IMG/VR virus record: IMGVR_UViG_3300024259_002152
Span: 62,001-126,000 of that record
Length of the DNA stretch: 64,000 bases
Reading direction: 5' to 3' (one strand)
In this document: one piece after another, positions 30,771 through 56,515 of the stretch
How the letters are laid out: each line of letters opens with the position of its first letter
How positions within the stretch are numbered: the first letter of the stretch is position 1
Translations under genes and position numbers: made by a program
Notes under the pieces: generated by a model
The model's input: only the letters and a program-made list of their open reading frames with translations
What the model was told of the DNA's origin: nothing
Databases searched by the model: none

Positions 30771-31478
30771 ATGATTATAGATATAATATTATTAACTTAC
30801 AATAATGTAGAAAATACTAAACAATGTATAAATAATCTTTACAAATTTACTGATAATTTTGGTTTAGTTATTTTAGATAATCACTCCACAGATGGTACTG
30901 TTGATTATTTGAAAAAAATATCAGACCAAAATGATAATATAACTTTATTCCTTTCTGATCTTAATTTGGGTATTATTAATGGCAGGAATAGTGCGTACAA
31001 ATTATCAAAAGGAACTGACTATATCGTTTTTCTCGATAATGATCAATATGTTCAAAAAGATTGGTTGGATAGTTATTTAAAATTAATGATAGATAAAGAA
31101 TTTGATTTGATTGGTTGTGAAGCATGGAAAATGAGAGAAAAAGATTTTTACCCATATAAAAAAATAATAGATAACAATGACACTTTTTCCTATGTCGGCG
31201 CTGGTGGATTAATGATTAAGAATAAGATATTCGAAAAATTAGGATTATTCGATGAAGATTATGATTTTATCTATTTTGAAGATCCTAGTTTATGCTTTAA
31301 GGCACATTATCAGGGATATAAAATAGGATGGAATTATAATCCAATAATAGACCATAATCATAAGGGGGCATTGTTAAGCAATGAGAATAGGAAATATTTT
31401 CTGAACAATTGGAAAGTATTTCAGAATAAATGGCAGGGAAAAAGAATCCCTATCTTCTCAAATACTGTTGAAAAGTGA
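30771..31478 (+). CDS. Glycosyltransferase family 2
   Basis: IILLTYN, ILDNHSTDGT, NLGIINGRN, YIVFLDND (DxD), FDEDYDFIYFED. Confidence 0.9.
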   Translation: MIIDIILLTYNNVENTKQCINNLYKFTDNFGLVILDNHSTDGTVDYLKKISDQNDNITLFLSDLNLGIINGRNSAYKLSKGTDYIVFLDNDQYVQKDWLDSYLKLMIDKEFDLIGCEAWKMREKDFYPYKKIIDNNDTFSYVGAGGLMIKNKIFEKLGLFDEDYDFIYFEDPSLCFKAHYQGYKIGWNYNPIIDHNHKGALLSNENRKYFLNNWKVFQNKWQGKRIPIFSNTVEK

Positions 31479-31502
31479 AAAAGTATCATATAAAAGTATA
31501 AT
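31468..31502 (+). promoter_or_regulatory. Putative promoter (copy 2), ATG at predicted +1
   Basis: TTGAAAAGTGAAA at 31468; ATG at 31503 is 35 nt downstream; the -10 position reads TAAAAG (weak). Confidence 0.6.
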
Positions 31503-32594
31503 ATGAAACTAGGAATATTTTGTAATTTTTCATATAAGCATGTTGGTGGCTCTGAAAATGTTATTAAGAACATATCGGACAGATTAGTCAACGATTTTGA
31601 TTATGAGGTAAATGTTTATAGTTTCAGCGTTAATGCTCCTTTTTACGAGAATAAGGTTAGATATTTTCCTTGTAAAAAGGGAGATGGACTGTTTGCTCAG
31701 ATTGCTCAAAACGACCATATCTTTATTTATAGTGATTCTTTTTGGCAGCTCGATACATTACTCCAAAATATCGATAAAATCGATTGTAGGGCATCCTTGG
31801 CACTCGTAGGTGCTTACCATTTACAATCTCATCCTGAATCTTTTAGATTATTAAAAGAGAATATAGAGAAATTTAATCTTATTACCCATTCTGAGACAAC
31901 TCCTGACTATAAGTGGTGTATTGACAATAACTTACCTGTTAAAGTGGTGCCCAACGGGGTTGATTTGTCTGAATTTTGGGAAAATAGAGTAAATTTTCGT
32001 GAAAAGTATAAAATAAAAGAAAAATATATTATTCTTAGCGTTTTTTCATATTTTTTTGGCAAAGGGTTTGAAATTCTTCCCAAAATAGCTGAAAAACTAT
32101 CAGAGCATTTAGATGATTTTTTAATTCTACAATGCTCAAACACCTCCCAGTACCCCTATGATAAACCATTTTTTGAGAGGACAAAAAAACAAAGTAGAGG
32201 ACTACCTATAAGGTTTTTAAGGGATATTCCTAGGGAAGATATTGTTTCGGCTTTTAATTGTTCTGATGTGTTTTTATCGCCAAGTAAGAAAGAAGTTGCT
32301 CCTATTGTTATTCTAGAATGTAGAGCGGCGAAATTGCCTTATGTTTCTTTTGCTGTGGGGAATGTTGGAGAACAAGGAGGAATTCCTTTGATAGTCCAAC
32401 AAAAGGATAATAAGGGTTATGCTATAGTTGAGAAGAGAGATATTGATCATTTTTCTGCTGCTATACTTCAACTATTGACCTGTAAAGATGAGAGATATAA
32501 AAATATAGTAATAGAAAAAGGACAACACTTTATAAACAACATTGATTGGGACAATATAGTTCTTTTGTATGATAGAGAATTTAGACATGAATAA
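31503..32594 (+). CDS. Glycosyltransferase family 4 (GT-B)
   Basis: GGSENV, VVPNGVDL, SDVFLSPSKKEVAPIVILECRAAKLPYV. Confidence 0.9.
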   Translation: MKLGIFCNFSYKHVGGSENVIKNISDRLVNDFDYEVNVYSFSVNAPFYENKVRYFPCKKGDGLFAQIAQNDHIFIYSDSFWQLDTLLQNIDKIDCRASLALVGAYHLQSHPESFRLLKENIEKFNLITHSETTPDYKWCIDNNLPVKVVPNGVDLSEFWENRVNFREKYKIKEKYIILSVFSYFFGKGFEILPKIAEKLSEHLDDFLILQCSNTSQYPYDKPFFERTKKQSRGLPIRFLRDIPREDIVSAFNCSDVFLSPSKKEVAPIVILECRAAKLPYVSFAVGNVGEQGGIPLIVQQKDNKGYAIVEKRDIDHFSAAILQLLTCKDERYKNIVIEKGQHFINNIDWDNIVLLYDREFRHE

Positions 32595-32901
32595 ATTAAT
32601 AGGAACTACTGTATTTTATTGGCATGATGCTAAAAAGGAAATGCCAAAGTATGATAGGCCAGTTCTCTTAAAAAGAGAGCCACGTGATAAAGGCAATCCA
32701 ACAAGAGAGAATTTTATTAGTGCATGTCGGAAAATAGATTGGTCCGACGGGCAGGATTATTGGGATTATGTTGGGAAGGTATTTGAAGAATATGAGTTTA
32801 ATGTTGTTGGTTGGGCATATCTGGCAGAAATGGTATCTAATGATATATCAGAGAATAAGACAAGTGAAATAAATGATAGATTTGAGATATTAGATTTATA
32901 G
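32569..32901 (+). CDS. DUF551-like small phage protein with C-terminal RFEILDL tag (start probably ATG 32587)
   Basis: WHDAKKEMP...VVGWAYL pattern; ends INDRFEILDL*. Confidence 0.65.
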   Translation: MIENLDMNKLIGTTVFYWHDAKKEMPKYDRPVLLKREPRDKGNPTRENFISACRKIDWSDGQDYWDYVGKVFEEYEFNVVGWAYLAEMVSNDISENKTSEINDRFEILDL

Positions 32902-32914
32902 AAAAGGAGAAAAA

Positions 32915-33103
32915 ATGAGCAAAACATGTAAAGAATGTAAAGGTAAGGGAAAGATAAAAAAGAAAGAATGTGATACCTGTCATGGGTTTGGATGGGTAGA
33001 ATGTCGCTGTGGGTCATATTGTTGTAAAGAGTGTAATCCAGCCAGTAATGAGGAATCAACTATGTTATTTCCTGGTTGTTCGTTCGGAAAGTGTAACGAT
33101 TAG
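32915..33103 (+). CDS. Small Cys-rich (DnaJ-type CxxCxGxG) zinc-finger protein
   Basis: CKECKGKG, CDTCHGFG, additional Cys; AGGAG RBS upstream. Confidence 0.65.
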   Translation: MSKTCKECKGKGKIKKKECDTCHGFGWVECRCGSYCCKECNPASNEESTMLFPGCSFGKCND

Positions 33104-33106
33104 ATT

Positions 33107-33820
33107 ATGAGCACTCCATTAGTTAGTGTAATTACGACAGCATATAATTGTGAAAAATATATAAAAGAGTCTATAAATTCTATTATTAATCAGACTTTTA
33201 GAGACTTTGAGATTGTCGTTTATAACGATGCTTCTACGGATAAAACGTGGGACATTGTTTTTCATATGGATTTATTTTGTGATCATAATATTTTTAGAGG
33301 AGATAAAAATGTGGGTTGTGGAGAAGGGAGAAATAGGGCGATAAAACAAGCAAGAGGGAAATATATAGCGATACAGGATGCTGATGATATAAGTCTTCCA
33401 GAGAGATTGGAGAAAGAAGTCAATTTTTTAGAAGAGAATGATGATATATTTTGTGTGGGAGCATGGGCCATAAAGATAAAAGAAGATGGTAGTTTTATCG
33501 AATCTATGACATATCCTCGTTCTGCACATGAAAAAATATATGAAGATATAATAGTTAAAAAAAATAATCCTATTATTGATCCTTCTTGTATGTATAGGAG
33601 GGGATTGTTTAATGAATTAGGGGGTTATGATGGTCGATGGAAACTAGTTCCTGATTTTAATCTGTGGGCTAGAGCGGCTAAAGCAGGTTTTAAATTTTTC
33701 AATTTTCAGGAAGCATTGGTGTATTATCGTCAACATCCTAATAGTGTGACAAATAAGAGTGAAATGGCTGTCGTTAGAGAGCATTACAGGATGTGTAAAG
33801 AGGTTTTAGGGAATAAATAA
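33107..33820 (+). CDS. Glycosyltransferase family 2
   Basis: PLVSVITTAYN, YNDASTD, ARGKYIAIQDADD, DFNLWAR. Confidence 0.92.
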   Translation: MSTPLVSVITTAYNCEKYIKESINSIINQTFRDFEIVVYNDASTDKTWDIVFHMDLFCDHNIFRGDKNVGCGEGRNRAIKQARGKYIAIQDADDISLPERLEKEVNFLEENDDIFCVGAWAIKIKEDGSFIESMTYPRSAHEKIYEDIIVKKNNPIIDPSCMYRRGLFNELGGYDGRWKLVPDFNLWARAAKAGFKFFNFQEALVYYRQHPNSVTNKSEMAVVREHYRMCKEVLGNK

Positions 33821-33876
33821 AGGTTTTTGATAAGATGTATTGGAATAATATAAATGGGATACTTTGATACGGAGAT

Positions 33877-34350
33877 ATGAATATGCAAGAGATACCCAAC
33901 TGGATTGTCAAAGTAGTCGAGACGGAAAAATTAGAATGTCGAAACTGTAAAATGGTATTTAGTGTTGATAATCTGATGTCAATTAGTGTTCAAGAAAGCA
34001 GTAAATCTCCTCATAAAGATACTTTATGTATAGGTTTATATTGTCATGACTGTAAAGAATTGATGATTTTTGAATTAAAAGAAATGAGTTTGATTGATTT
34101 TGCATTTGAGATACTAGACCAAGAGACATCTAATAAGATTCAGAAGAAATCCAAAGATGATTCTCCAGCATTGGCAAATAAATCAGGAAAAAAGAGAATC
34201 AAAAGAATAAATTCTAAAAGCAAAATAACACGTAAAGAGGTAGATGATATAAAGAAGTTTTTAGGTGATAAGAATTTATCTCATGAAGAATTTTTAATAG
34301 CTTTAGGGATGTTGCCAGAAGATATTAAGAAATATAATTATAAAAAATAG
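33877..34350 (+). CDS. Hypothetical protein with zinc ribbon
   Basis: CRNC...CHDC; Lys-rich C-terminus. Confidence 0.6.
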   Translation: MNMQEIPNWIVKVVETEKLECRNCKMVFSVDNLMSISVQESSKSPHKDTLCIGLYCHDCKELMIFELKEMSLIDFAFEILDQETSNKIQKKSKDDSPALANKSGKKRIKRINSKSKITRKEVDDIKKFLGDKNLSHEEFLIALGMLPEDIKKYNYKK

Positions 34351-34358
34351 AGAATAAC

Positions 34359-35414
34359 ATGAGTAAAATAAGTGATTTCAAAATAGCCGAATCTATTCTT
34401 AGGAAGATATGTAGAAAGTATAATGTTAATTTTATAGATGTTCCAATCTCTTTTGAAGAACAGGTATCAGGATCTTTGTTTATCGGAGAAACAAGAAACG
34501 TAGCTCATACAACATTTAAGATTGTAGCGGAGTATATGGAGAATTCGTTAGATATTTTAGATATTCAGCTAATGCCAGATAGAGATGATTTTCTTATTGT
34601 TTTAGCCTCTAATCTGAGAACTTTTATGTATGGGGATGATCCTGATTGCGATTTTGTAGATGAGGCTCATGTTTTGAGATTGTATCAATTCCCTATGGTT
34701 TGGATTTTATTAAAAGACATTATTTGTCCTTTACATAATAAAGAGCTGATCAATTTTAAAATTATTTGTGATGGTAATCCAGAACTAGATATTGCTAAAT
34801 ATTATAAGAAAGAAGATTTACCATCGAAAGAGATATCAGATGAGTCATTTATTTTTGTGAATATAATTAATAATAGGGTTGTTCAGAATGCTTTTATTTT
34901 CATAGAGGTATTAAAAGCGTATGGACTATCTCCGATAGAGGTTGTTAAAAATATATATGAAACAGATGTGTATGATAAATATAAGGGTTTGCTTGAGATT
35001 GCTTTAGAGGAAGAAGAGGTATCTGATTTCGAGTGTGCAATTATGGCTAATTTGGGTATTAATTTTTATGCTTTAATTTCTAATAAAATGGCACGCATCA
35101 ACTCTAATTCCATTAAGACTGCTCAAAATTCGGTTCCAGGATTGCCGAATCAATTTTGGCAGTTAGGGGTATTAGAGCAAATGATTGAGCCTGCACGTGG
35201 TGACGATTGGACGGTTTATAATAATTTAGAGCCATATGTTAAGGATTTCTGGGACAAAGTGGAAGACGTGAGGAAGAAAAGGGTCGCAAATGGTCATGAT
35301 GATGGTGTGCCATTTAATGTCCTTTTACGTCTAAAGCAAAAGCAGACCGTAGGTTATAAAACAGATCCAACATTAACTATTCAGTCTTTATTGTCATCTG
35401 ATAGGGTCTGGTAA
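34359..35414 (+). CDS. Hypothetical protein
   Basis: 351 aa ORF in operon; no motif recognised. Confidence 0.6.
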   Translation: MSKISDFKIAESILRKICRKYNVNFIDVPISFEEQVSGSLFIGETRNVAHTTFKIVAEYMENSLDILDIQLMPDRDDFLIVLASNLRTFMYGDDPDCDFVDEAHVLRLYQFPMVWILLKDIICPLHNKELINFKIICDGNPELDIAKYYKKEDLPSKEISDESFIFVNIINNRVVQNAFIFIEVLKAYGLSPIEVVKNIYETDVYDKYKGLLEIALEEEEVSDFECAIMANLGINFYALISNKMARINSNSIKTAQNSVPGLPNQFWQLGVLEQMIEPARGDDWTVYNNLEPYVKDFWDKVEDVRKKRVANGHDDGVPFNVLLRLKQKQTVGYKTDPTLTIQSLLSSDRVW

Positions 35415-35420
35415 ATACCC

Positions 35421-35449
35421 TTGAAAAGTGAAAGTAATAGAAATATTAT
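35421..35449 (+). promoter_or_regulatory. Putative promoter (copy 3)
   Basis: TTGAAAAGTGAAA at 35421, 17-nt spacer, TATTAT at 35444-49; ATG at 35456. Confidence 0.65.
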
Positions 35450-35487
35450 TGTAGAATGTTTGGTTGTTAATTATCGAGGTAGATAAA

Positions 35488-35808
35488 ATGAATAGCGATG
35501 AATATGTTGTTTTTTTGACGAGTGTTTTAATTAAAATAGAAAATGCTATTAATTTATTAGAGCATAAACCTGCTAAACATATACCGGCATATCATAAAAT
35601 GCTAGGAGTTCAGCAAAAATTAGCAGGTTTGGACTGCGATTATAGAAGTAAATTATTTTCACAGTTAATAGTAACGAGAGGGATAATTAGTTATTTGACT
35701 AATGGTCAGTATGAAAATGCTCTTGTTCAAATAATGAATTTAAAGGGAGATTTAATAAACATTTGTTTAGAAATAAAGAATGAAAAAGATACAGTCAAAA
35801 AAGTTTAA
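35488..35808 (+). CDS. Hypothetical protein (ORF track start 35464; ATG 35488 has GAGGT RBS)
   Basis: Helical ORF; RBS GAGGT upstream of ATG 35488. Confidence 0.6.
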   Translation: MNSDEYVVFLTSVLIKIENAINLLEHKPAKHIPAYHKMLGVQQKLAGLDCDYRSKLFSQLIVTRGIISYLTNGQYENALVQIMNLKGDLINICLEIKNEKDTVKKV

Positions 35809-37518: not shown

Positions 37519-38472
37519 TTGATGATGGCACAAAAAGATGCTAAAGATATTCTCAGAGATATAAAGGCAGATATAGAAGGGGTAGACCCTAAAGACATAC
37601 AGTTTCAAGACTTACGTAAAAGAAGAAATAAAAAAAAGAAAGTAGAAAAATCTAATGAAAGTGAAAGTGGAAGTGGTATAATTGGAAACACTGAAGGTTT
37701 CTCACTTTTGGAAGTAGAGACTAAATGTTGCGATTATAGAGATATAAGTAAGAAAGGAAAGTTGAGAGAAAAGGGTAGTCTTGAGGAGTGGGGACCTTTT
37801 GATTTTTTTAAATTTGCTCATAAATTATATGTTAATCGATATCAGATAGAGTGGGATTTAAATATGGGGGGAAGTAGTCTTGAGATTAACCGGATTAAAG
37901 ATAAGTTTGTTGATGTTTTCGGTTATTGTTGTAATTTAATGATATATGATTATATTGTTTATTTTTTCGAATATCATATTGATTATTTTAAGAATAAAGA
38001 TGGTTTTTATTTTAGCCAAATGAAAACAGATTGGATAATTCTAACATTTCAAGAGACATATGATTTTAGAGAGCGTTTCGTTAATTATATGACGCAGAAA
38101 AAACAAAAGAATAAGAAATATCAATTAACACATGATGAAATTCAAAAATCTTATGATATGGGCGATACAACTTTAATTGGGAATTATGGAATTGTTATCG
38201 CTTTAAACTGGCTTTTGAAGATAAAGAAGATTAACAAAAAAGATGCGATAAAGGTTGTCGTTGATGCATGTAAAGATATGTATAAAAAGCATTTGATAGA
38301 TGTTGTCCAAAGCGCAACGGAGATATATTCTCCATATCCTGTTAATCTAATATTCAAAAGTCCTCAACTTGTTCTAAATAAAATAGATAAAAATATTAAA
38401 CTTAAAGTAGAGTTTAATGATAATAATCAAATGGAATTTTTACAAAAGGGAGATAATACGAAAGGTGCTTAA
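37519..38472 (+). CDS. Hypothetical protein
   Basis: 317 aa; basic N-terminus; TAATG-coupled to infC. Confidence 0.6.
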   Translation: MMMAQKDAKDILRDIKADIEGVDPKDIQFQDLRKRRNKKKKVEKSNESESGSGIIGNTEGFSLLEVETKCCDYRDISKKGKLREKGSLEEWGPFDFFKFAHKLYVNRYQIEWDLNMGGSSLEINRIKDKFVDVFGYCCNLMIYDYIVYFFEYHIDYFKNKDGFYFSQMKTDWIILTFQETYDFRERFVNYMTQKKQKNKKYQLTHDEIQKSYDMGDTTLIGNYGIVIALNWLLKIKKINKKDAIKVVVDACKDMYKKHLIDVVQSATEIYSPYPVNLIFKSPQLVLNKIDKNIKLKVEFNDNNQMEFLQKGDNTKGA

Positions 38473-38981
38473 TGGAACGAACATATAATGTTAACGGCCA
38501 GATCGAAGCAGATATAGTTAATTTGGTTTTGACTGATGGACAAGTTAAGAAGGCTATTAGTTTATCTGATGCACTAGACATTGCTGAAGATGAAGGGTTA
38601 GATGTTGTAGAAGTATCTTCAAATGGGGAAAATGGTATTCCTGTTTGTAAGATGATAGATTATGGCAAAATGATGTATCAACAAAGAAAAAAGAAAAAGA
38701 ATCAAAAGCAAATACAGCATGTTAAAGAGATTAAATATAATTTAAATATTGGTTCTCATGATCTTGGCATTAGACATACAAAGATATTAAAGTTTTTATC
38801 AAAAAAATATACTGTTAAATATACTTTGGAACTTAATGGCAGAGAAAGGAATATGATTGATAGTGCTGTAGTTACAATTAATAAAAATTTGGAAGAATTT
38901 AGAGATGTGGCGACATGGAAACCTCCAAAAGTTTCAACAGGTAGAAGAGTAACGATATCTACCACTCTTGTCCCAGTATAG
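38472..38981 (+). CDS. infC: Translation initiation factor IF-3 homolog
   Basis: VNGQI...ALDIAEDEGLDVVEVS...PVCKMIDYGKMMYQQRKK...VKEIK...HDL...KFL...GRE. Confidence 0.9.
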   Translation: MERTYNVNGQIEADIVNLVLTDGQVKKAISLSDALDIAEDEGLDVVEVSSNGENGIPVCKMIDYGKMMYQQRKKKKNQKQIQHVKEIKYNLNIGSHDLGIRHTKILKFLSKKYTVKYTLELNGRERNMIDSAVVTINKNLEEFRDVATWKPPKVSTGRRVTISTTLVPV

Positions 38982-38983
38982 TG

Positions 38984-39012
38984 TTGAAAAGTGAAAAGTA
39001 AGTTGTTAATTT
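38984..39012 (+). promoter_or_regulatory. Putative promoter (copy 4)
   Basis: TTGAAAAGTGAAA at 38984; -10 position TAATTT at 39007-12. Confidence 0.6.
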
Positions 39013-39043
39013 AGTAGTAGTGTTTTTAGAAAAGGATTAATAG

Positions 39044-40702
39044 ATGAAACCGATTAGTAAAAAAGTGAGCGAAGCGACATTAGACGAGATGTGTACGAAA
39101 AAATTTAAGGATGATTTTACAAATATTTTACGTTGTCGTTATCCTTTATTTTATATCACTCACAATGAGGAAAAAAGATTAACACAATTTTTGACTCACT
39201 TTTGTAAGGTCAAAGGTTATGAATGCTTTTTATGGGATAGCTATAATGGGCTTGTAAATTTGTTTAGTGGAGAAGAGGTGGCAGGTACTACTGAGGATCT
39301 GAAAAATAATCCTCTGGCTATTCTCGATCATGTTATTGGGGAAGGTAGAACTTTTGAGAAAAAGAAAACAAGTGTTCTAGAGAAGAAGGAGAAGGGTTGT
39401 AATGGGATAATTTATGTCCTGTTGGACTTTTTTAATTTTATCCAAGCAAATCCAGATATTGAAAGACGTTTTGTAGCATTGTCTAATTTGAATTCTATTG
39501 TTAGTACTGTTTGTACAGGTCCGTATTATCAGTCCACCGATGTGATTCAAAACATTTTACCGATGATTGAGTTTCCTTTTGCTAACAAAAAAGAAATTCG
39601 TCATGCTTTATATGATGTGGTTCATGGTGCTGAAAGAAAGATTCCTACTATTGCTAAAGAGACTAAGGCAATGGAAGAAGAACTGATTAGTGCTGTTTCT
39701 GGTTTGACTCTTATGGAGGCACAAACGGCATTTAGTAAATCTCTTGTGTCGCGCCATACTTGGGACACAGATCTCATTTTAGAGGAAAAGAAACAGATTA
39801 TCAGTAAAAGTGGCATGTTGGAGTATTTTGATAAAACTGTTTCGATGGAAGATATCGGAGGATTAAAGAATTTAACCACATGGATAAAAGAGAGAAAAAA
39901 ATGTTTTTCACAAGAGGCAGAAGATTATGGGATAAAGAAGCCTAGGGGTCTGTTGACTATTGGTATGCCTGGGTGCGGGAAGTCTTTAGTATGTAAAGCC
40001 ATTAGTAGTGTATGGAAAATGCCTTTATTAAGGTTGGACTTTGGTAAGCTTTTTGGGAATCTTGTTGGTGATTCTGAGAAGAATGCTCGGGAAGCCATTA
40101 AACAGGCCGAAGCAATTGCTCCCTCGATTTTGTGGATAGATGAAATTGAGAAAGCTATTTCTGGAGTTAATTCTAGTGGTCGCTCAGATGGAGGAACTAC
40201 AAGTCGAGTGTTGTCCACTTTCCTAACATGGATGCAGGAAAAAACCTCTCCTGTATTTGTGGTTGCTACTGCTAATAATCATGATGCGATACCTCCTGAA
40301 TTTTTGAGAGCAGGTCGTTTTGACGAGATCTTTTTTGTTGATTTGCCGAATATAGATGAGAGAGAAGAGATTTTTAATGTTCTTCTCAGACTTAGGGAAA
40401 TTAACACCAAAAAGATTAACATACCTTTATTGGCAGAAAAAAGTTCTGGGTATAGTGGTGCCGAGATTGAAAAAGGGATCGATAATGCTATGCTAGTCGG
40501 CTTTAGCGATTCAGCTAGGCCAATTGATAGTGACGACATTGTTACTGCTCTTGGTCAATTTAAATCTTTGTTTGAAATGAGACAAGCAGATTTTGAAGAG
40601 CTTAGAGAATGGGCAACAAATAAATGTCGTATGGCAAACGATGAACCTAAGAGAATCGTTAATCTAGGACAAGATAATTCTGCTAAAGATTTGGATTTAT
40701 GA
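39044..40702 (+). CDS. Ycf46-like AAA+ ATPase (degenerate N-terminal AAA domain plus intact C-terminal AAA domain)
   Basis: GMPGCGKS, ILWIDEIEK, ATANN...PPEFLRAGRFDEIFFVDLP; ends KDLDL*. Confidence 0.88.
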   Translation: MKPISKKVSEATLDEMCTKKFKDDFTNILRCRYPLFYITHNEEKRLTQFLTHFCKVKGYECFLWDSYNGLVNLFSGEEVAGTTEDLKNNPLAILDHVIGEGRTFEKKKTSVLEKKEKGCNGIIYVLLDFFNFIQANPDIERRFVALSNLNSIVSTVCTGPYYQSTDVIQNILPMIEFPFANKKEIRHALYDVVHGAERKIPTIAKETKAMEEELISAVSGLTLMEAQTAFSKSLVSRHTWDTDLILEEKKQIISKSGMLEYFDKTVSMEDIGGLKNLTTWIKERKKCFSQEAEDYGIKKPRGLLTIGMPGCGKSLVCKAISSVWKMPLLRLDFGKLFGNLVGDSEKNAREAIKQAEAIAPSILWIDEIEKAISGVNSSGRSDGGTTSRVLSTFLTWMQEKTSPVFVVATANNHDAIPPEFLRAGRFDEIFFVDLPNIDEREEIFNVLLRLREINTKKINIPLLAEKSSGYSGAEIEKGIDNAMLVGFSDSARPIDSDDIVTALGQFKSLFEMRQADFEELREWATNKCRMANDEPKRIVNLGQDNSAKDLDL

Positions 40703-47456: not shown

Positions 47457-47717
47457 ATGCCAATTTATGAGTACGAACACCCTGAGACAGGGGAGATATT
47501 TAGAGAAATAAGAAAAGTGAAAGAGAGAGATAATCCTTTTATATCTAAAGATGGAAAGATATGTAAAAGGATAACATTTCCTGGGGGAATAAAAGGTTGG
47601 AAGAAGAATAGGGAAGTTTTCGAAGCTGATCCTGCGTATGTTAAGCAGTCCAACCCCAAGTTCGTTCAATTCCAAGACGGTCATAAAGAGAGATATGACT
47701 CTACAAAACACTGTTGA
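47457..47717 (+). CDS. FmdB-family zinc-ribbon-like protein lacking most of the Cys ligands
   Basis: MPIYEYEHPETGEIF resembles MPIYEYxCxxCG of FmdB proteins. Confidence 0.65.
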   Translation: MPIYEYEHPETGEIFREIRKVKERDNPFISKDGKICKRITFPGGIKGWKKNREVFEADPAYVKQSNPKFVQFQDGHKERYDSTKHC

Positions 47718-47748
47718 AAAGTGAAAGATAAAAAGACATAATAGATGG
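47714..47748 (+). promoter_or_regulatory. Putative promoter (copy 5), ATG at predicted +1
   Basis: TTGAAAAGTGAAA at 47714, 17-nt spacer, CATAAT at 47737-42, ATG at 47749. Confidence 0.7.
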
Positions 47749-48108
47749 ATGAGATTTATACGTAAAGAGTTTATAGTTACTACTATATTTAATAAAGAAT
47801 TAACAGAGAGGGACGAAGTCCTAATCGTTTTTAACAATTTATTAAATGAGAGGATAGAGTTCGCTATGACTATGAAGAAGTATATGCCTATGCAACAAGA
47901 CTATTTCAATATGAGTTTTGAAAAAGTTAGGGTGAAGAGAATCAACGATGATGATACTGTTGATTTGTTAGCTTTCAAGAGTGGGGTTAAAACTAACATA
48001 AAGGGGGTTCCTTTTGATCATATCATAGAAGTAAATGCGACTACTAAAAAACATAAAATTTTAGATATTGACTCCGATTTAAATCGTTTTGATATATTAG
48101 ACTTGTAA
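47749..48108 (+). CDS. Hypothetical protein with C-terminal tag (NRFDILDL)
   Basis: 119 aa. Confidence 0.7.
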   Translation: MRFIRKEFIVTTIFNKELTERDEVLIVFNNLLNERIEFAMTMKKYMPMQQDYFNMSFEKVRVKRINDDDTVDLLAFKSGVKTNIKGVPFDHIIEVNATTKKHKILDIDSDLNRFDILDL

Positions 48109-50189: not shown

Positions 50190-51605
50190 ATGAAATACAA
50201 TAATAAAGATTTTGTTCACTTTCACACACATTCGGAATTTAGTCAGTTTGACGGTTTGGCCAAGGTAGATGATCTTGTTCTTCAAGCTCGAAAGATGGGA
50301 TTTCCATCATTAGCACTTACGGACCATGGATCGGTTATGGGCTGGGTTAAATTTCTCCAGGCAGCAAGAGCTACTAAGGACAAAAAAGGGAAAGATATTC
50401 CTTACGCTCCTATTAAACCTATCCTTGGTTGTGAATTTTATCTGGCTCGAAAAATGAGTATAGGTCAAAATGAGGAGAAAAGAGATACTGATCTTATAAA
50501 AAAATGGCAGCCCGATGGGAGAAGAGGAAATAGACATTTGAATCTCTATGCTATGAATTTTGAAGGATATAAGAATGTATGTCGTATGTCCCAAAGGTCT
50601 TTTACCGAGGGTTTTTATTATGATGCACGTATCGATATTGATTTAATATCAAAACACTCTAAAGGAGTAATGTGTGGTTCAGCATGTCTATCTAGCGTTA
50701 TTAACGCTAATTTAATGTATGGTCGTTACAACCAAGCTAAACAGGTTTGTGGTGTTTTGAATGAGATATTTGATGGTAATTTTTTTCTAGAAATAATGTA
50801 TCATGGGATTAGGGAAGAAAGAGAAATTATTCCTTTAATCTTAAAATTATCATCAGAATTAGATATTCCTGTAGTTGCTACGAATGATTCTCACTACATT
50901 TATAAGGATCAAGGAGAATCTCAAGAAGTCCTATTGTGTATGTCTCAGCAAAGATGTGTTAAAGATCCAAAGAGATTAAAATTTGGTCATATGGAGTTCT
51001 ATCTAAAAAGTGCAGAAGAAATGGGCAGGATGTTTGGGCATATCCCTCATAGTTTGACTAATTCTGTTGCTCTTGCGGAGAGAATTAATACTAAAGATAT
51101 AGAAGATAACCTTTTTGGGGGCATGAGACTGCCAAAGTTCGATATACCTGAAAAGTATAAAAGTCCTTATGATTATTTATCTGATTTAGCATGGCAAGGC
51201 ATGAAAAGAATAGGTTGGGATCAGAGTAAAGAGCATGTTGAAGCACTAAAAAAAGAGTTAGAAGATGTTCTGGTCGCTCAAGAAAATAATAATTATGATT
51301 TCTCAACTTATTTTCTAATTGTTCGTGATTACATTCTTGACGCAAAGGAAAAGGGTGTTTTGGTGGGTTGCGGTAGAGGGAGTGGTTATGCTAGTGTGCT
51401 ATTAAGATGTATTGAAATTACTTATGGAGTTGATCCATTAAAATATGGACTTCTTTGGGAAAGGTTTTTAGGATTTGATTCTAAGAAGTTTATTAAAGAG
51501 TCAGATTTCGGCTTTGAAGAAGATTTGGTGCAGGCGGCGGCAGATAAAGATTTAGGAGGAGATAGAGAGTTAGAAGATGATTTGGGAGGGGTAGATAGAT
51601 ATTAA
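50190..51605 (+). CDS. dnaE: DNA polymerase III alpha, N-terminal fragment (PHP domain to ERFL)
   Basis: FVHFHTHSEFSQFDG, LTDHG, PILGCEFY, ATNDSHY, YFLIVRDYI, VGCGRGS, DPLKYGLLWERFL, then an acidic tail and stop. Confidence 0.93.
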   Translation: MKYNNKDFVHFHTHSEFSQFDGLAKVDDLVLQARKMGFPSLALTDHGSVMGWVKFLQAARATKDKKGKDIPYAPIKPILGCEFYLARKMSIGQNEEKRDTDLIKKWQPDGRRGNRHLNLYAMNFEGYKNVCRMSQRSFTEGFYYDARIDIDLISKHSKGVMCGSACLSSVINANLMYGRYNQAKQVCGVLNEIFDGNFFLEIMYHGIREEREIIPLILKLSSELDIPVVATNDSHYIYKDQGESQEVLLCMSQQRCVKDPKRLKFGHMEFYLKSAEEMGRMFGHIPHSLTNSVALAERINTKDIEDNLFGGMRLPKFDIPEKYKSPYDYLSDLAWQGMKRIGWDQSKEHVEALKKELEDVLVAQENNNYDFSTYFLIVRDYILDAKEKGVLVGCGRGSGYASVLLRCIEITYGVDPLKYGLLWERFLGFDSKKFIKESDFGFEEDLVQAAADKDLGGDRELEDDLGGVDRY

Positions 51606-51997: not shown

Positions 51998-52153
51998 ATG
52001 ATAGATGATAATAAATGTTTTGTTATAGGGTGTCTTGGTGTTAATGAAGAAGCATATGTAGGAGAATATGTGTTTTTCAGAGATTTTAATCATTGTCTGA
52101 GGTTTAAAAAAATAGAAGCAATTCATGATAGATTTGAGATAATGGACTTATAG
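51998..52153 (+). CDS. Small ORF missed by the track, with tag (MIDDNKCF...IHDRFEIMDL); frame is open back to 51890
   Basis: Hand translation: 51 aa from ATG 51998; no stop between 51890 and TAG 52151-53. Confidence 0.65.
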   Translation: MIDDNKCFVIGCLGVNEEAYVGEYVFFRDFNHCLRFKKIEAIHDRFEIMDL

Positions 52154-52162
52154 GAGAAAAAA

Positions 52163-52687: not shown

Positions 52688-53010
52688 AATACAAAGTAGG
52701 AGATAAAGTAAGGATTAAGATATGGGAAGACATGTTAATAGAGTTGTGTAATTATTGGGAGACTCTAGAACAGGCAAGAAACCGTCTTGAGGATCAACAT
52801 ATCTGTCTTGAAAAGGAACTTAACAAGGTAAATGTTGATAGGATTTTGACTATTGAAAGTATAGAAAAACGTGAAGGTTATTATTGTTATCGTACAAAGG
52901 AGAAAGGTTGGGAATGGACTGAGGATATGATAGAAGGGATAGTAGAAGACGTGATAGAGGACCGAATTGAGGATAGAATAGAAAGTAGATTTGAGATATT
53001 GGATATATGA
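52684..53010 (+). CDS. KOW/SH3-like small protein with tag (IEDRIEDRIESRFEILDI)
   Basis: Paralog of 30506 and 53671. Confidence 0.75.
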   Translation: MKYKVGDKVRIKIWEDMLIELCNYWETLEQARNRLEDQHICLEKELNKVNVDRILTIESIEKREGYYCYRTKEKGWEWTEDMIEGIVEDVIEDRIEDRIESRFEILDI

Positions 53011-53402
53011 AATTTATAGAAGTAATAGATTATAATAAGTCATATCCTCAAGGTATTTTTGTAAAAATTCCTATCAAAGATATAAAGAAATTTCATAAGG
53101 TTGAAAAATATACTAGATATTATATAGATTTAGATGATTCAGAACGTTTGTTAAAACGTAAGTATAAAGAACACCTTGGTAATCACATGTTTATCGAGAA
53201 ATCTGAAAATGGTCAATATTATAGTGCTGGGATTATGATTAATCATAAAACACAGATACAATGCCAATCGTCATGTGGTGGTAGTATATATTTTTATTTT
53301 TCAGATTTGGATTATGAAGAATTTGAGGGAGAAGCTCGGTTGTATGATTTGTCGTTACATATTGCCGATATTAATTATAGATTTGAGATATTGGATATAT
53401 AA
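53007..53402 (+). CDS. Hypothetical protein with tag (DINYRFEILDI)
   Basis: 131 aa; ATGA overlap. Confidence 0.7.
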   Translation: MKFIEVIDYNKSYPQGIFVKIPIKDIKKFHKVEKYTRYYIDLDDSERLLKRKYKEHLGNHMFIEKSENGQYYSAGIMINHKTQIQCQSSCGGSIYFYFSDLDYEEFEGEARLYDLSLHIADINYRFEILDI

Positions 53403-53404
53403 AA

Positions 53405-53671
53405 GTGACAGATAAAGAATTTTTACAGATGGTGAGAAATTCATTTGCTCAGGTTCGTAATAAGGGTAATTTGCCTACTGGTCCTGAGCTAATTGAATCA
53501 TTATTATCAGTTCAACCTATGACTGATGAATTAGTTGCAGAGGGATATACTAATGAATTAATAAAATTAGGAAGTTCTAATTTGCAGCGTAAAAAAGTTA
53601 TTATTACAGCATATATGGATATTAATTATAGATTTGAAATATTGGATATACAAAAACAGGAGATAAAGTAA
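53405..53671 (+). CDS. Hypothetical protein; tag extended by QKQEIK
   Basis: GTG start; ...RFEILDI then CAA where sister copies have TAA/TGA/TAG. Confidence 0.65.
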   Translation: MTDKEFLQMVRNSFAQVRNKGNLPTGPELIESLLSVQPMTDELVAEGYTNELIKLGSSNLQRKKVIITAYMDINYRFEILDIQKQEIK

Positions 53672-53940
53672 TGAAATATAAAACAGGAGATAAAGTAAGG
53701 ATAAAGACAAAGGGTCAGATGGAGAAAGAATTTGGCTATTATGACGAAGAAAGCAAATTCATAAATTGTGATCAACATTTTTCTTCTATTATGGAAGAGG
53801 CACTGAATCGGCTAGATAGTGATAGAATTCTTACTATTAATCATTTAGAATATTTTCAAAATGTTAATTATTATTACATGAGGGAAATAGAGGGATTTTG
53901 GACTGATGATATGATAGATGAGTTAGTAAATGATAAATAG
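53671..53940 (+). CDS. KOW/SH3-like small protein; tag lies just downstream in the +1 frame (possible frameshift)
   Basis: MKYKTGDKVRIK...; 53930-53962 reads MINRFEILDI* in the +1 frame. Confidence 0.7.
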   Translation: MKYKTGDKVRIKTKGQMEKEFGYYDEESKFINCDQHFSSIMEEALNRLDSDRILTINHLEYFQNVNYYYMREIEGFWTDDMIDELVNDK

Positions 53941-53971
53941 ATTTGAGATATTGGATATATAGGAATAAAAG

Positions 53972-54505
53972 ATGAGTGAAGTAAGTAAATTATCAGAAGA
54001 AGATCTTAAAAAAATAGCGGATATGATGGTTGATCAGGCAGTAGTGCCGTCTCCTAAAGCAATTATTAAAATAGAAAATGAGACTGTTCCTGAAACTGAT
54101 ACAATTAAAAGATATAAAAGGTCTAATAAACAATTACGGACAAAAGTAGAAAGACAGATTAGCGAAATAGCCAAACAGGAAGCAGAGATAAAAGAGTTGC
54201 AGGTAAGTGCTTATCTTAATACGGATGAGGCTAAAGATACGATCAATAAAAAATTAAGAGAAGAAAAACAAGCATTAAAGCTAAAAATGGAAGAGCAGGG
54301 ATTAAATTTTGAAAAAGAGCGCAAAGAAATAATAGAGACAAGAAGTAAGATTTATGAGTTAGAACGAACAATAGGGAGTAATAAGAAAGAGATTGAGGGG
54401 CTAAGAACAGAAGTGGATCAATTAATGAATGATAATAGAGAACTTCAAGCAGAGATAGATGCTAGAATTAAAGCAGATGGTAGATTTAATATAATGGATT
54501 TATAA
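53972..54505 (+). CDS. Coiled-coil protein with tag (GRFNIMDL)
   Basis: 177 aa, heptad-rich. Confidence 0.75.
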   Translation: MSEVSKLSEEDLKKIADMMVDQAVVPSPKAIIKIENETVPETDTIKRYKRSNKQLRTKVERQISEIAKQEAEIKELQVSAYLNTDEAKDTINKKLREEKQALKLKMEEQGLNFEKERKEIIETRSKIYELERTIGSNKKEIEGLRTEVDQLMNDNRELQAEIDARIKADGRFNIMDL

Positions 54506-54506
54506 T

Positions 54507-54541
54507 TTGCAAAGTGAAAGTTTTGAAAATATATTTAGAGA
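54507..54541 (+). promoter_or_regulatory. Putative promoter (copy 6) for DnaE C-fragment, ATG at predicted +1
   Basis: TTGCAAAGTGAAA at 54507, 17-nt spacer, TATATT at 54530-35, ATG at 54542. Confidence 0.7.
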
Positions 54542-56515
54542 ATGGCAGATTTAGCAGATATTAAAAAAGAGATAATAGGATATATCACTAAAAAGCACTC
54601 CAAGAGCGATAAATTACCAAAAATTATTTCTAAAGTGAAAGAAGAACTCGATGTTTTAGAATCGACTGACGGTTTAGAAGGCAAGAATAATTTAGAAGTA
54701 TTTTATAATACATGGAAGAGCCACAAGGGAGAGGTGGGTCATAAAAATGACATTAATAGTTGGGCTGCTTTCTTCCTGGGGATAACGGAAGTAAAACCTG
54801 ATGGAGATTTTCTTCCGACTAGGCGTGCTTTTGCTAGGGCGGGATTCCCTGATATTGACACTGATTTTGATTACGAGAATAGGGATACTGTTTATTCTTA
54901 TATAATTGATAAGTATGGAAGAGAGAATGTAGGGAATATTGGCACTCACGGATTATTGAAATTTAAATCATGTGTGACCAGGGTGACTAAAGCTTTAGAT
55001 CTAGCAAATGCTTATCACAAAGGTAGTGATGCTTTTGTTAGCGAAAATGCTGCTAAGGTAACAGAAATTTTATCTCCTTTTCCGAAAATGGGACTAGTGA
55101 AAGTTACTGACGATGATGGTGAAAGTTACCTTATAAAAACTTTCCAAGATGCTTATGATCATTGTCCAGATTTTAGACATTATGTTGACAAATATGAGAG
55201 TAGTCATTTCAAAGAATATATGGAGCATATAGAAGGGACATTTGCTAATTTCGGCTGCCATGCTGCAGGAATAGTTGTTTCTGATATTCCTCTTGATGAA
55301 ATTGCTCCTTTGAGAAATGCTAAAAAGGGAGTTCTTGCCACTCAATTCCCTAATGAAGATTTGGAATCAATAGGTCTTATTAAATTTGATGATCTTGCTC
55401 TTTCTACTTTATCCATTGTGAAAAAAACAGTAAAAATGGTAAAAGAACATTGGGGAATAGAAGTAGATCTAGAAAATCTGCCTATGGAAGATGATGCTAC
55501 TTTCGAATTATATCGTAGAGGAAATTTGGGTGGAGTTTTTCAGTGTGAAAATAGTGGCATGCAAAAAACTATGAGAGATATAGGAGTAGATCGTTTTGAA
55601 GATATTATAGCGGGACTAGCTCTTTATCGTCCTGGACCTATGGATAGTATTCCTGAGTATTGTGCAAGAAAGCATGAAGAAAATGAAATTAGTTACTTTC
55701 ATAGGTCAATTGAGCCATTTGTAAAATCTTATTTAGAAAGCACATATGGAATCTTATGTTATCAAGAGCAAGTTATGCAGATTTGTAATAGTCTTGCAGG
55801 TTTTACTATTACTGATGGCTACATAATGATTAAGTCGATTGGTAAGAAAAAAGAATACTTAATGAAGCGTTTTGAAGAACAATTTATTTTAGGTTGTGAA
55901 AGAAATAAAGTGCCGTCAGATGTTGCTAAGCAATATTGGGATAAATTTATAGTTCCTTTCTCTGGTTATGGGTTTAATTTGGCTCATAGTGCTTGTTATG
56001 GTTATAATTCTTACACTACAGCATATCTAAAAGCTAATTATCCTGATGAATTTATATGTTCTTTATTAGATGTGACGATAAATAGTTCTCAGGGTGAAAG
56101 GTATGATAAAGTTTCAGCATTTGAGAGGGAATTTAAAAGAAAGATGGGTGTTAAATTTCTTCCCAGAGATATAAATAAGTGTAAAGTATCATTTACTATC
56201 GAAAAAAGAAAAGATCTTGCAGAAGGTGTAAAAAAAACAGAAATACGTCCTAGTCTTTTATGTAAAGGGCTTTTAACTAAATCTGCCAAGAACATAGAAG
56301 AAAATCAACCTTATGAAGATATGAGAGATATAGTTAGAAAAACTGATTCTTCGTTAGTTGATACTAGGGTTATAGACGCTTTGGCTACAGGGGGATATTT
56401 AGGTAAAAAGCATATAGAAGACTCTTCTGTTATAGTAAAAGATTTTGTCATGATCAGAGAGGATATGAAAAAAACTGCTAAAAGAGGGGTAGAAACTATT
56501 GATATATTTGGTTAA
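54542..56515 (+). CDS. dnaE: DNA polymerase III alpha, C-terminal fragment (catalytic Asp residues, fingers, HhH)
   Basis: GFPDIDTDF, YIIDKYG, GCHAAGIVVS, GLIKFDDLAL, GVFQCE, LALYRPGPM, TYGILCYQEQVMQI, YGFNLAHS, LKANYP. Confidence 0.93.
   Translation: MADLADIKKEIIGYITKKHSKSDKLPKIISKVKEELDVLESTDGLEGKNNLEVFYNTWKSHKGEVGHKNDINSWAAFFLGITEVKPDGDFLPTRRAFARAGFPDIDTDFDYENRDTVYSYIIDKYGRENVGNIGTHGLLKFKSCVTRVTKALDLANAYHKGSDAFVSENAAKVTEILSPFPKMGLVKVTDDDGESYLIKTFQDAYDHCPDFRHYVDKYESSHFKEYMEHIEGTFANFGCHAAGIVVSDIPLDEIAPLRNAKKGVLATQFPNEDLESIGLIKFDDLALSTLSIVKKTVKMVKEHWGIEVDLENLPMEDDATFELYRRGNLGGVFQCENSGMQKTMRDIGVDRFEDIIAGLALYRPGPMDSIPEYCARKHEENEISYFHRSIEPFVKSYLESTYGILCYQEQVMQICNSLAGFTITDGYIMIKSIGKKKEYLMKRFEEQFILGCERNKVPSDVAKQYWDKFIVPFSGYGFNLAHSACYGYNSYTTAYLKANYPDEFICSLLDVTINSSQGERYDKVSAFEREFKRKMGVKFLPRDINKCKVSFTIEKRKDLAEGVKKTEIRPSLLCKGLLTKSAKNIEENQPYEDMRDIVRKTDSSLVDTRVIDALATGGYLGKKHIEDSSVIVKDFVMIREDMKKTAKRGVETIDIFG

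What the first reader, a model, noticed from the sequence alone, without database searches (positions are those of the whole stretch)
31468..54544. Four promoters put an ATG exactly at +1 (leaderless mRNAs) in a genome that encodes IF3
Seen in sequence: the distance from the first T of the -35 to an ATG is exactly 35 nt at 31468/31503 (GT4), 35421/35456, 47714/47749 (tag array) and 54507/54542 (DnaE-C). That is the canonical 6+17+6+6 geometry, and none of these has a clear SD. The copies before 30506, 39044 and 58339 have longer leaders with GGAG/AGGA. Established knowledge: IF3 disfavours leaderless initiation, and the IF2:IF3 ratio tunes it. Inference: the phage uses leaderless transcripts for one gene class, and its own IF3 could act as a translational switch between leaderless and SD-led genes.
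Basis: partly seen in the sequence, partly recalled or inferred. Interest (0 to 1): 0.72.

Follow-up and report, generated by a model that had tools for sequence, protein, structure and literature searches.

The report
Conserved promoters that start transcripts at ATG
In an uncultured 350-kb marine phage, three early promoters sit so close to their genes that the messenger RNA should begin at the ATG. Related phages have kept this exact spacing, so these leaderless messages are probably real, but their proposed link to the phage's own initiation factor IF3 is untested.

Summary
The 35-nt distance from the first T of the -35 to an ATG is exact at all four sites. Three of the ATGs are true gene starts: 31503 (glycosyltransferase), 47749 (ORF119) and 54542 (C-terminal part of a split DnaE). 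The fourth, 35456, opens a 4-codon ORF; its gene starts at 35488 behind a GAGGT Shine-Dalgarno (SD) site.

The promoters belong to a family of about 30 sites, all on the + strand: TTGAAA(A)GTGAAA, then TATAAT at a 16-17 nt spacer.

The main evidence is comparative. Upstream of DnaE-C and ORF119 homologues at 68-87% identity, the -35 block and the -10 are conserved. The spacer and the 6-nt discriminator have diverged almost to random, and there are no indels, so the ATG stays at the seventh base after the -10. The glycosyltransferase site keeps an offset of 34-36 in four relatives.

Distant relatives have SD-led leaders instead. Leaderless mRNAs are therefore the best reading, at about 0.7 and without transcription-start data.

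"One gene class" is not supported, and the IF3 switch is untested. The phage IF3 is intact, but it carries ELNGR where bacterial IF3s have RFRGR, the start-codon-inspection motif. Published variants of that motif permit leaderless initiation, so a permissive IF3 is the more interesting lead.

The parts
47714..47751 (+). Promoter abutting ORF119: -35 TTGAAA 47714-47719, GTGAAA 47721-47726, -10 CATAAT 47737-47742, discriminator AGATGG, ATG 47749 at the predicted +1.
   Evidence: Offset 35 is kept in 5 of 6 relatives at 71-77% identity, with the spacer and discriminator diverged.
47749..48108 (+). ORF119, function unknown. It ends in the RFDILDL tag. In relatives it lies just upstream of DnaE-N.
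54507..54544 (+). Promoter abutting DnaE-C: -35 TTGCAA 54507-54512, GTGAAA 54514-54519, -10 TATATT 54530-54535, discriminator TAGAGA, ATG 54542 at the predicted +1.
   Evidence: Offset 35 is kept in 8 relatives at 71-87% identity, offset 36 in one and 37 in three; none has an SD.
54542..56515 (+). C-terminal part of a split DNA polymerase III alpha (DnaE): pol3_alpha positions 69-259, finger and HHH domains.
   Evidence: Pfam. The N terminus MAD... aligns at residue 1 with homologues.
31468..31505 (+). Promoter abutting the glycosyltransferase gene: -35 TTGAAA 31468-31473, GTGAAA 31475-31480. The -10 is ambiguous: TATAAA 31489-31494 at spacer 15, TAAAAG 31491-31496 at spacer 17, or TATAAT 31497-31502 touching the ATG. 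ATG at 31503.
   Evidence: Offset 35 in L134 and L135, 34 in L018, 36 in L136.
31503..32594 (+). Glycosyltransferase (Glycos_transf_1), 363 aa.
   Evidence: Pfam. The N terminus MKLGIFCNF is conserved at residue 1.
35421..35490 (+). SD-led family promoter, not leaderless: -35 35421-35426, -10 TATTAT 35444-35449, a 4-codon mini-ORF 35456-35470 at +1, GAGGT 35476-35480, and the real start ATG at 35488.
   Evidence: Relatives have 31-32 nt leaders with an SD and no ATG at +1.
38472..38981 (+). Phage IF3, 169 aa, with IF3_N and IF3_C domains. Residues 120-124 (38829-38843) read ELNGR where E. coli has 129-RFRGR-133. It has an ATG start with an AAGGTG SD.
30439..30508 (+). SD-led family promoter: TTAAAA-17-TATAAT, a leader of about 32 nt containing GGGAG, ATG at 30506.
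38984..39046 (+). SD-led family promoter directly after IF3: TTGAAA-17-TAATTT, a leader containing AAGGA, ATG at 39044 (AAA+ ATPase).
58272..58341 (+). Weaker family member: TTAAAAGTGATT, then TAAAAT. The leader contains TAGGAG and the ATG at 58339 starts a gp32-like protein.
37655..37682 (+). Family-like site inside the ORF upstream of IF3: ATGAAA-GTGAAA-16-TGGTATAAT. It may be an internal promoter.
   Evidence: Not followed up.

Best explanation
The window carries 6-8 members of a clade-wide family of sigma-70-type promoters. The consensus is TTGAAA(A)GTGAAA, a 16-17 nt spacer and TATAAT. About 30 copies occur in this 350-kb marine phage contig, all on the coding strand, and they lie before replication, host-takeover, sigma-factor and tRNA genes.

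At three promoters (before 31503, 47749 and 54542) the -10 lies 6-8 nt from the ATG of a real gene. RNA polymerase should therefore start at, or within 2 nt of, the A of the ATG. The primary transcript would then have no leader and no Shine-Dalgarno site.

Such mRNAs are translated when ribosomes, mainly 70S, bind a 5'-terminal AUG together with fMet-tRNA.

**Shown here**
- The motif family and its geometry.
- True N-termini for the three genes.
- Absence of an SD at the three genes.
- Conservation of the exact spacing in relatives.

**Inferred**
- The transcription start position.
- That these mRNAs are translated from the 5' AUG.

The fourth site, 35421, is an ordinary SD-led promoter.
For: **1. 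Promoter identity.**
- The family is strand-specific, 30 sites against 0, and intergenic.
- It is present in three related contigs.
- Mean pairwise identity among relatives is 0.92-0.97 for the -35 plus GTGAAA block, 0.45-0.52 for the rest of the spacer, 0.81-0.84 for the -10 and 0.31-0.44 for the discriminator. This is the pattern expected of a sigma-70 promoter.

**2. Conserved geometry.**
- DnaE-C: offset 35 in the window plus 8 relatives (71-87% aa identity), 36 in one and 37 in three.
- ORF119: offset 35 in 5 of 6 relatives. Two of them have a different upstream gene or gap, so the constant is promoter-to-ATG, not stop-to-ATG.
- Glycosyltransferase: offsets 35, 35, 34 and 36 in four relatives.
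- No indels occurred although the intervening letters drifted.

**3. SD usage.**
- About 73% of the 453 ORFs have an SD core of at least 4 nt.
- These three genes have none.
- More distant homologues that lack the abutting promoter often carry GGAGG, AAGGAG or AGGA instead.

**4. Sites where read-through cannot supply the mRNA.**
- Genome 10549 lies in a divergent intergenic region, with the ATG on the 11th base after the -10.
- Genome 20507 lies directly behind a 12-bp terminator hairpin with a T-tract, with the ATG on the 9th base.
- In relative G002, site 94079 reads TGGTATAAT, 6 nt, then the ATG of a protein whose N terminus looks like a KdsC/HAD phosphatase (by eye, not searched). It also lies in a divergent region.

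**5. Start codons and spacing classes.**
- All candidate starts are ATG.
- Start distances are bimodal, 7-11 or at least 24, with none between.
Against: - There is no transcription-start or ribosome data. No RNA run was listed and the host is unknown.
- In the window the upstream genes end inside or right at the -35, with no terminator. Read-through transcripts probably exist and could also supply these genes.
- The -10 hexamers at the abutting sites are sub-consensus: CATAAT, TATATT, and TAAAAG or TATAAA.
- At 31468 a rival GTGAAA-16-TATAAT reading would start transcription inside the gene.
- Genome-wide there is no excess of -10-like hexamers 7-9 nt upstream of gene starts, so this concerns about 5 of 453 genes.
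- The layout is absent in relatives at 66% identity or less.
- The predicted 5' structure of these mRNAs is not unusually weak.
Confidence: 0.7

Rival explanations
1. The promoters are real, but they serve the downstream genes. The first gene (glycosyltransferase, ORF119 or DnaE-C) is translated mainly from read-through polycistronic RNA. Initiation there would be SD-independent, or would be re-initiation after the upstream stop 25-37 nt away. The ATG at +1 would then be a by-product of tight packing.
For: - The upstream ORFs stop inside or 1 nt before the -35: TGA at 31476-31478, TGA at 47715-47717, TAA at 54503-54505.
- There are no terminators nearby.
- The genome is 93% coding.
- The -10 hexamers are sub-optimal.
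Against: - Packing does not explain why a 6-nt discriminator is held without indels in 14 or more diverged sequences.
- It does not explain why the promoter-ATG distance is kept where the upstream gene or gap differs (L129, L131).
- It does not explain the same layout where there is room and no read-through.
Confidence: 0.2
2. The phage IF3 acts as a canonical discriminator that turns down the phage's own leaderless genes as it accumulates, giving a temporal translational switch.
For: - An intact IF3 with N and C domains is encoded at 38472-38981.
- Excess bacterial IF3 inhibits model leaderless mRNAs (review PMC9031893).
Against: - IF3 lies among the same promoter family, so no separate timing is visible.
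- IF3 is present in relatives whatever the layout of these genes.
- The RFRGR motif that inspects the start codon reads ELNGR here. E and L are invariant in 22 clade members, whereas 80 bacterial IF3s all have R or K at position 131.
- Published changes of this motif relieve inhibition of leaderless mRNAs (PMC11775629).
Confidence: 0.08
3. It is chance. In an AT-rich genome, some promoter-like strings happen to be followed by an ATG at offset 35.
For: - Generic sigma-70-like matches are at background level (112 found against 100 expected).
- Two of the four ATGs on the seventh base genome-wide open only mini-ORFs (35456 and genome 249474).
- The genome-wide binomial P is only about 0.009.
Against: - The offset is conserved across relatives at three loci.
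- The control set of 110 chance 14-mer hits gave an ATG at offset 35 once.
- The three ATGs are validated N-termini.
Confidence: 0.02

Closest known systems
Leaderless cI mRNA from the lambda PRM promoter (and other phage and bacterial leaderless mRNAs)
   Same: A sigma-70-type promoter places the A of the AUG at +1. There is no SD, and translation starts from a 5'-terminal AUG (PMC10491246 abstract; review PMC9031893).
   Different: Here it is predicted, not mapped. It concerns lytic-type early genes (a DnaE part, a glycosyltransferase and an unknown protein) of an uncultured jumbo phage. The exact spacing is conserved across a clade. TSS maps of jumbo phages phiKZ and AR9 found no leaderless transcripts (PMC8244752; PMC5312081).
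In silico leaderless-gene signature: a TATAAT-like signal about 10 nt upstream of start codons (Zheng et al. 2011, PMC3160421, listed)
   Same: The same criterion applies: a -10 box 6-8 nt from the start and no SD.
   Different: In this phage the signature is not genome-wide. It is confined to about 5 members of one promoter family.
Phage-encoded IF3 of huge and jumbo phages (Al-Shayeb 2020, PMC7162821; 121Q-like Asteriusvirus; Vibrio phage 2.275.O; Atu_ph07)
   Same: A full-length IF3 with N and C domains in a phage of about 350 kb or more. Its function is stated to be unknown, or 'redirection of host translation'.
   Different: It is under 42% identical to any of these. It forms its own clade, with ELxGR in place of RFRGR.
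IF3 variants with relaxed proofreading: E. coli R131P, the mitochondrial IF3 KKGK motif, and mycoplasma IF3 with P, F or Y at position 131 (PMC11775629)
   Same: The same five-residue motif is altered, including loss of the basic residue at position 131 in this phage (N) and in about half of its clade.
   Different: The substitution differs in kind: the charge is reversed at 129 (E) and position 130 is L. No biochemical data exist for it, and R133 and Y75 are retained.
Early-promoter families of large lytic phages read by host RNA polymerase (for example T4 early promoters; from general knowledge)
   Same: Many near-consensus -35/-10 copies, with extra conserved letters beside the -35, all on the coding strand.
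   Different: The extra block GTGAAA sits 0-1 nt after the -35 and matches no described element that I could identify. The phage also encodes sigma-like proteins, so which holoenzyme reads the family is unproven.

Membership tests
Leaderless mRNA | Transcription start 0-5 nt from the start codon | not testable with these tools
   It is predicted only from -10 geometry: the seventh base at 47749 and 54542, and the seventh to ninth at 31503. No RNA run was listed.
Leaderless mRNA | The start codon is AUG and is the true N terminus | tested here: met
   It is an ATG at all three sites. Homologues align from residue 1. The 35456 ATG fails this test, because it opens a 4-codon ORF.
Leaderless mRNA | No Shine-Dalgarno site upstream of the start | tested here: met
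   No SD core at proper spacing lies before 31503, 47749 or 54542. By contrast, 73% of ORFs have a core of at least 4 nt. The gene at site 35421 has GAGGT.
Leaderless mRNA | Selection on the 5'-terminal position of the AUG | tested here: met
   The offset is invariant, with no indels, while the discriminator identity is 0.31-0.44.
Sigma-70-type promoter | -35 TTGACA-like, 16-18 nt spacer, -10 TATAAT-like | tested here: met
   It is weak at 31468, where the hexamer at spacer 17 is TAAAAG and TATAAA sits at spacer 15.
Sigma-70-type promoter | Hexamers conserved and spacer letters free in relatives | tested here: met
Sigma-70-type promoter | Transcription by host sigma-70 holoenzyme | not testable with these tools
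   The host is unknown, and the phage encodes sigma-like proteins.
Translation initiation factor IF3 | IF3_N and IF3_C domains over Pfam cut-offs | tested here: met
   70.6 and 50.5 bits. It aligns over residues 3-159 with the E. coli IF3 chain 8jsg_A, E = 2e-21.
Translation initiation factor IF3 | Conserved 129-RFRGR-133 start-codon inspection motif | tested here: not met
   It reads ELNGR in the window and EL[RNSKH]GR in 22 clade members. In 80 bacterial IF3s, 64 have RFRGR and position 131 is R or K in all.
Translation initiation factor IF3 | Linker tyrosine (E. coli Y75) | tested here: met
   Y69 is invariant in the clade.
Translation initiation factor IF3 | Autoregulatory non-canonical start codon (AUU in E. 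coli infC; from general knowledge) | tested here: not met
   The gene has an ATG start at 38472 with an AAGGTG SD. This feature is not universal.

The most novel reading that the evidence does not exclude
This clade of marine jumbo phages pairs two things.
- It holds leaderless early mRNAs under selection. These include the heads of both halves of its split replicative polymerase.
- It encodes an IF3 whose start-codon-inspection motif has changed from RFRGR to ELxGR.

On this reading the phage IF3 is a leaderless-permissive, relaxed-proofreading factor. It would replace or outcompete host IF3 on the ribosome and shift initiation toward 5'-terminal AUGs, instead of repressing them.

Other jumbo-phage IF3s (121Q, Vibrio phage 2.275.O, a 735-kb phage) have also lost the basic residue at position 131. 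This could therefore be a general answer to what phage IF3s are for.
Probability: 0.2. Interest if true: 0.8.

Novelty: new member of a known kind. Interest (0 to 1): 0.55.

Why it matters
- Leaderless mRNAs are rare in well-studied phage-host systems outside a few repressor genes, and TSS maps of jumbo phages phiKZ and AR9 found none. A clade-wide, spacing-conserved leaderless layout on replication genes would show that some large lytic phages rely on SD-independent initiation.
- It also gives a concrete handle on an open question, namely what phage-encoded IF3 does. The motif change found here (RFRGR to ELxGR, with parallel losses of R131 in other jumbo phages) can be tested directly in a reconstituted translation system with leaderless and SD-led reporters.
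- For annotation, gene callers that demand an SD may mis-start such genes. Several database homologues of the glycosyltransferase are called 9-21 residues longer.

Tried and rejected
- **RNA evidence.** One search of any run kind and one RNA-only search were made. Only DNA runs from seawater metagenomes hold the stretch, and no RNA run was listed.
- **Megablast against cultured phages.** No match. Protein-level hits are all under 42% identical for IF3, so no cultured relative or host was found.
- **Whole-record search of metagenome relatives.** I used exact-protein contig look-ups instead; one returned no DNA.
- **Genome-wide scan for -10-like hexamers upstream of all starts.** There is no peak at 7-9 nt, so a genome-wide leaderless signature was rejected.
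- **5' RNA folding.** The first 45 nt of candidate mRNAs are not distinctive.
- **Scan of IMG/VR for the 14-mer.** It gave mostly chance hits in unrelated contigs, useful only as a negative control.
- **Candidates discarded.**
  - Genome 268962: the real start is an SD-led ATG before a signal peptide.
  - Genome 281546: a GTG start with homology beginning only at residue 93.
- **Corrected recollection.** I recalled infC362 as R131P. The literature says infC362 is Y75N.
- **Host inference from the IF3 neighbours.** The nearest are Alphaproteobacteria and Chlamydiae at 33-48% identity. This is too distant and is biased by the word patterns used.

Full report
**Context**

The window is bases 62,001-126,000 of a 350,866-bp viral contig from a seawater metagenome. 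The contig is 33% G+C, and CheckV puts completeness at 73%. By my ORF map, 421 of 453 ORFs lie on the + strand and 93% of the contig is coding. No cultured phage matches it at the DNA level.

**The observation**

All four distances of 35 nt from the first T of the -35 to an ATG are exact. The shared string TTGAAAAGTGAAA occurs four times exactly in the window.

Genome-wide the core AAGTGAAA occurs 60 times on the + strand and 7 times on the - strand. The aligned + strand copies give one consensus: TTGAAA, 0-1 nt, GTGAAA, then TATAAT, so that the -35 to -10 spacer is 16-17 nt. Requiring a -10-like hexamer leaves 30 sites on the + strand and none on the - strand.

These sites precede several kinds of gene:
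- an AAA+ ATPase, a gp32-like protein, a glycosyltransferase and the DnaE C part (Pfam);
- a sigma-like gene;
- the tRNA array.

The same family is present in three related viral contigs, G001-G003. Generic sigma-70-like matches in this AT-rich DNA are at background level, so only this extended family carries weight.

**Site by site**

- 47714: TTGAAA, 17 nt, CATAAT, 6 nt, ATG. The ATG is the first start of a 119-aa ORF.
- 54507: TTGCAA, 17 nt, TATATT, 6 nt, ATG. The ATG starts a 657-aa protein with the DNA_pol3_alpha (positions 69-259), finger and HHH domains. The PHP domain and positions 2-100 of the alpha domain are encoded separately at 50190-51605, so DnaE is split.
- 31468: the ATG starts a 363-aa glycosyltransferase, but the hexamer at a 17-nt spacer is TAAAAG. 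TATAAA sits at a 15-nt spacer, which puts the ATG on the ninth base after the -10. A perfect TATAAT also touches the ATG and would pair only with GTGAAA as a -35.
- 35421: good promoter geometry, but the ATG opens ATG-TTT-GGT-TGT-TAA. The gene starts at 35488 behind GAGGT. This site is SD-led, contrary to the finding.

**Is it more than chance?**

An ATG on the seventh base after the -10 occurs at 4 of 30 family sites. The ATG frequency is 0.027, so the binomial P is about 0.009. Two of those four ATGs are mini-ORFs. All four offset-35 cases lie in this window, so the in-window statistic is post hoc. By itself this is weak.

A control set of 110 chance occurrences of the 14-mer in unrelated viral contigs had an ATG at offset 35 once.

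**The decisive evidence is comparative**

*DnaE-C.* A metagenome scan with DnaE-C gave about 25 relatives with usable upstream DNA.
- In the window and eight relatives at 71-87% protein identity, the -35 starts exactly 35 nt before the ATG.
- The distance is 36 nt in one relative and 37 nt in three.
- None has an SD.

*ORF119.* Exact-protein look-ups gave six loci. Five, at 71-77% identity, have offset 35. Two of these have a different upstream gene or gap.

*Glycosyltransferase.* Offsets are 35, 35, 34 and 36 in four relatives. Others have 55-63 nt leaders or no promoter.

*Column conservation* (mean pairwise identity):

| Segment | Identity |
|---|---|
| -35 plus GTGAAA | 0.92-0.97 |
| Rest of the spacer | 0.45-0.52 |
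| -10 hexamer | 0.81-0.84 |
| 6-nt discriminator | 0.31-0.44 |

There is not a single indel. This is the footprint of a working sigma-70-type promoter, and also of selection to keep the ATG at the seventh base after the -10.

*More distant homologues.* At 66% identity or less, the homologues carry leaders with GGAGG, AAGGAG or AGGA, or have no promoter. The layout is therefore a derived, maintained feature of a sub-clade.

The three N-termini align at residue 1 with all homologues, which fixes the start codons.

**Further candidates outside the window**

Start distances from the -10 are bimodal: 7-11, or at least 24. Three extra cases cannot be supplied by read-through transcription:
- Genome 10549 lies in a divergent intergenic region, with the ATG on the 11th base.
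- Genome 20507 follows a 12-bp terminator hairpin and T-tract, with the ATG of a gene whose N terminus reads like a macro domain (by eye, not searched) on the ninth base.
- In G002, TGGTATAAT, 6 nt, then the ATG of a protein whose N terminus reads like a KdsC/HAD phosphatase (by eye, not searched), again in a divergent region.

Two other short-distance sites were discarded.

**What argues for caution**

- No RNA run was listed, so the transcription starts are inferred from geometry.
- In the window the upstream ORFs end inside or next to the -35, with no terminator. Read-through RNA probably also covers these genes.
- There is no genome-wide excess of -10-like hexamers 7-9 nt before starts. 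About 5 of 453 genes are involved, while 73% of ORFs have an SD core of at least 4 nt.
- The 5' folding energy is not distinctive.

**IF3**

ORF 38472-38981 is a full-length IF3. Pfam scores are 70.6 bits for IF3_N and 50.5 bits for IF3_C, and it aligns with E. coli IF3 at E = 2e-21. It starts with ATG behind an SD. It is conserved in G001-G003 at 36-47% identity, next to the same AAA+ ATPase gene, and in 22 metagenomic proteins at 53-77% identity.

Phage IF3 is already known in huge and jumbo phages, with no assigned role (PMC7162821; PMC11895373 and PMC7824862; 83 phage records).

Excess IF3 inhibits model leaderless mRNAs, although the effects depend on concentration and on the mRNA (PMC9031893). 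Nothing here shows a switch, however. IF3 sits among the same promoter family, and all four genomes compared have IF3 whatever the layout of these genes.

One new lead came out of the IF3 comparison. E. coli 129-RFRGR-133 inspects the start codon. According to PMC11775629:
- R131P promotes leaderless and non-AUG initiation in vivo;
- the mitochondrial KKGK version of the motif removes the inhibition of leaderless mRNA even at high IF3.

The phage protein aligns ELNGR to this motif. In 22 clade members it is EL[RNSKH]GR, with E and L invariant. In 80 bacterial IF3s, 64 read RFRGR, position 131 is always R or K, and position 129 is never E.

Other jumbo-phage IF3s differ at the same motif:

| Phage | Motif |
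|---|---|
| Vibrio phage 2.275.O | RLHGR |
| 121Q | KTSGR |
| A 735-kb phage | FFSGR |
| Atu_ph07 | RFKGR |

If anything, then, the phage IF3 looks like a relaxed or permissive variant, not a stricter discriminator. This is inference by analogy and was not tested.

**Verdict**

The leaderless reading is the best explanation, at about 0.7. "One gene class" is unsupported and the IF3 switch is untested. Leaderless phage transcripts are a known kind (lambda cI), so this is a new member of that kind. The IF3-motif lead gives it added interest.

Noticed in passing
ORF ends at window 32901, 47203, 48108, 50165, 52153, 52687, 53010, 53402, 53962 and 54505; 28 ORFs across the whole contig: Twenty-eight ORFs end in the same C-terminal heptapeptide, R-F-(E/D/K/G/N)-I-(L/M)-D-(L/I)-stop. 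They include ORF119 and every small ORF between the two DnaE halves. The tag is also kept upstream of DnaE-C in relatives. Its function is unknown; it could be a degron or a targeting signal.
   Followed up: partly
window 50190-51605 and 54542-56515: The replicative polymerase DnaE is split into an N part (PHP plus the first 100 positions of the alpha domain) and a C part. About 2.9 kb of small tagged ORFs lies between them. In some relatives ORF119 lies directly upstream of DnaE-N, so predicted leaderless promoters head both halves.
   Followed up: partly
window 38829-38843 (IF3 residues 120-124); loci L218-L221: The IF3 start-codon-inspection motif RFRGR reads ELNGR here and ELxGR throughout the clade. 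Three other jumbo-phage IF3s (121Q, Vibrio phage 2.275.O, a 735-kb phage) also lack the basic residue at position 131, which is R or K in all 80 bacterial IF3s examined.
   Followed up: partly
G000:C1:327905-338016 (outside the window): An array of 31 tRNA genes preceded by family promoters. The tRNA-Met at 330879-330969 has initiator-like traits (an unpaired 1:72, GGG/CCC in the anticodon stem, a TTCAAAT T-loop) but also an unusual long extra arm.
   Followed up: partly
G000:C1:266786-267340 and about 267800-268531; also about 225628: Sigma-factor-like ORFs (Sigma70_r4 over the cut-off, r2 weak). One lies directly behind a family promoter. This fits the family being early promoters that switch on phage sigma factors.
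   Followed up: no
window 35456-35470; G000:C1:249474 region: Two SD-led promoters place an ATG at the predicted +1 that opens only a mini-ORF, of 4 and 11 codons. The second ends in ATGA, overlapping the main start. The first is not conserved in relatives and is probably chance.
   Followed up: partly
window 37655-37682: A family-like promoter with an extended -10 (TGGTATAAT) lies inside the ORF about 800 nt upstream of IF3. It may be an internal promoter for IF3.
   Followed up: no
window 6498-13163, 13165-19068, 21048-27275 and 27284-30427: Four very large ORFs in a row (2221, 1967, 2075 and 1047 aa). They were not annotated here.
   Followed up: no
L132 / P0061 / P0167 (contig Ga0366840_1000004, 547,943 bp): Homologues of ORF119 and the glycosyltransferase lie on a 548-kb contig that NCBI labels as a Candidatus Asgardarchaeia MAG. 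It is more likely a related huge-phage contig that was mis-binned.
   Followed up: no
L003 region of G002 (52142): In relative G002 the homologue of the 35488 gene has its promoter only 13 nt from the ATG, with GAGGTGAT filling the gap. The transcript would therefore begin inside the SD.
   Followed up: no
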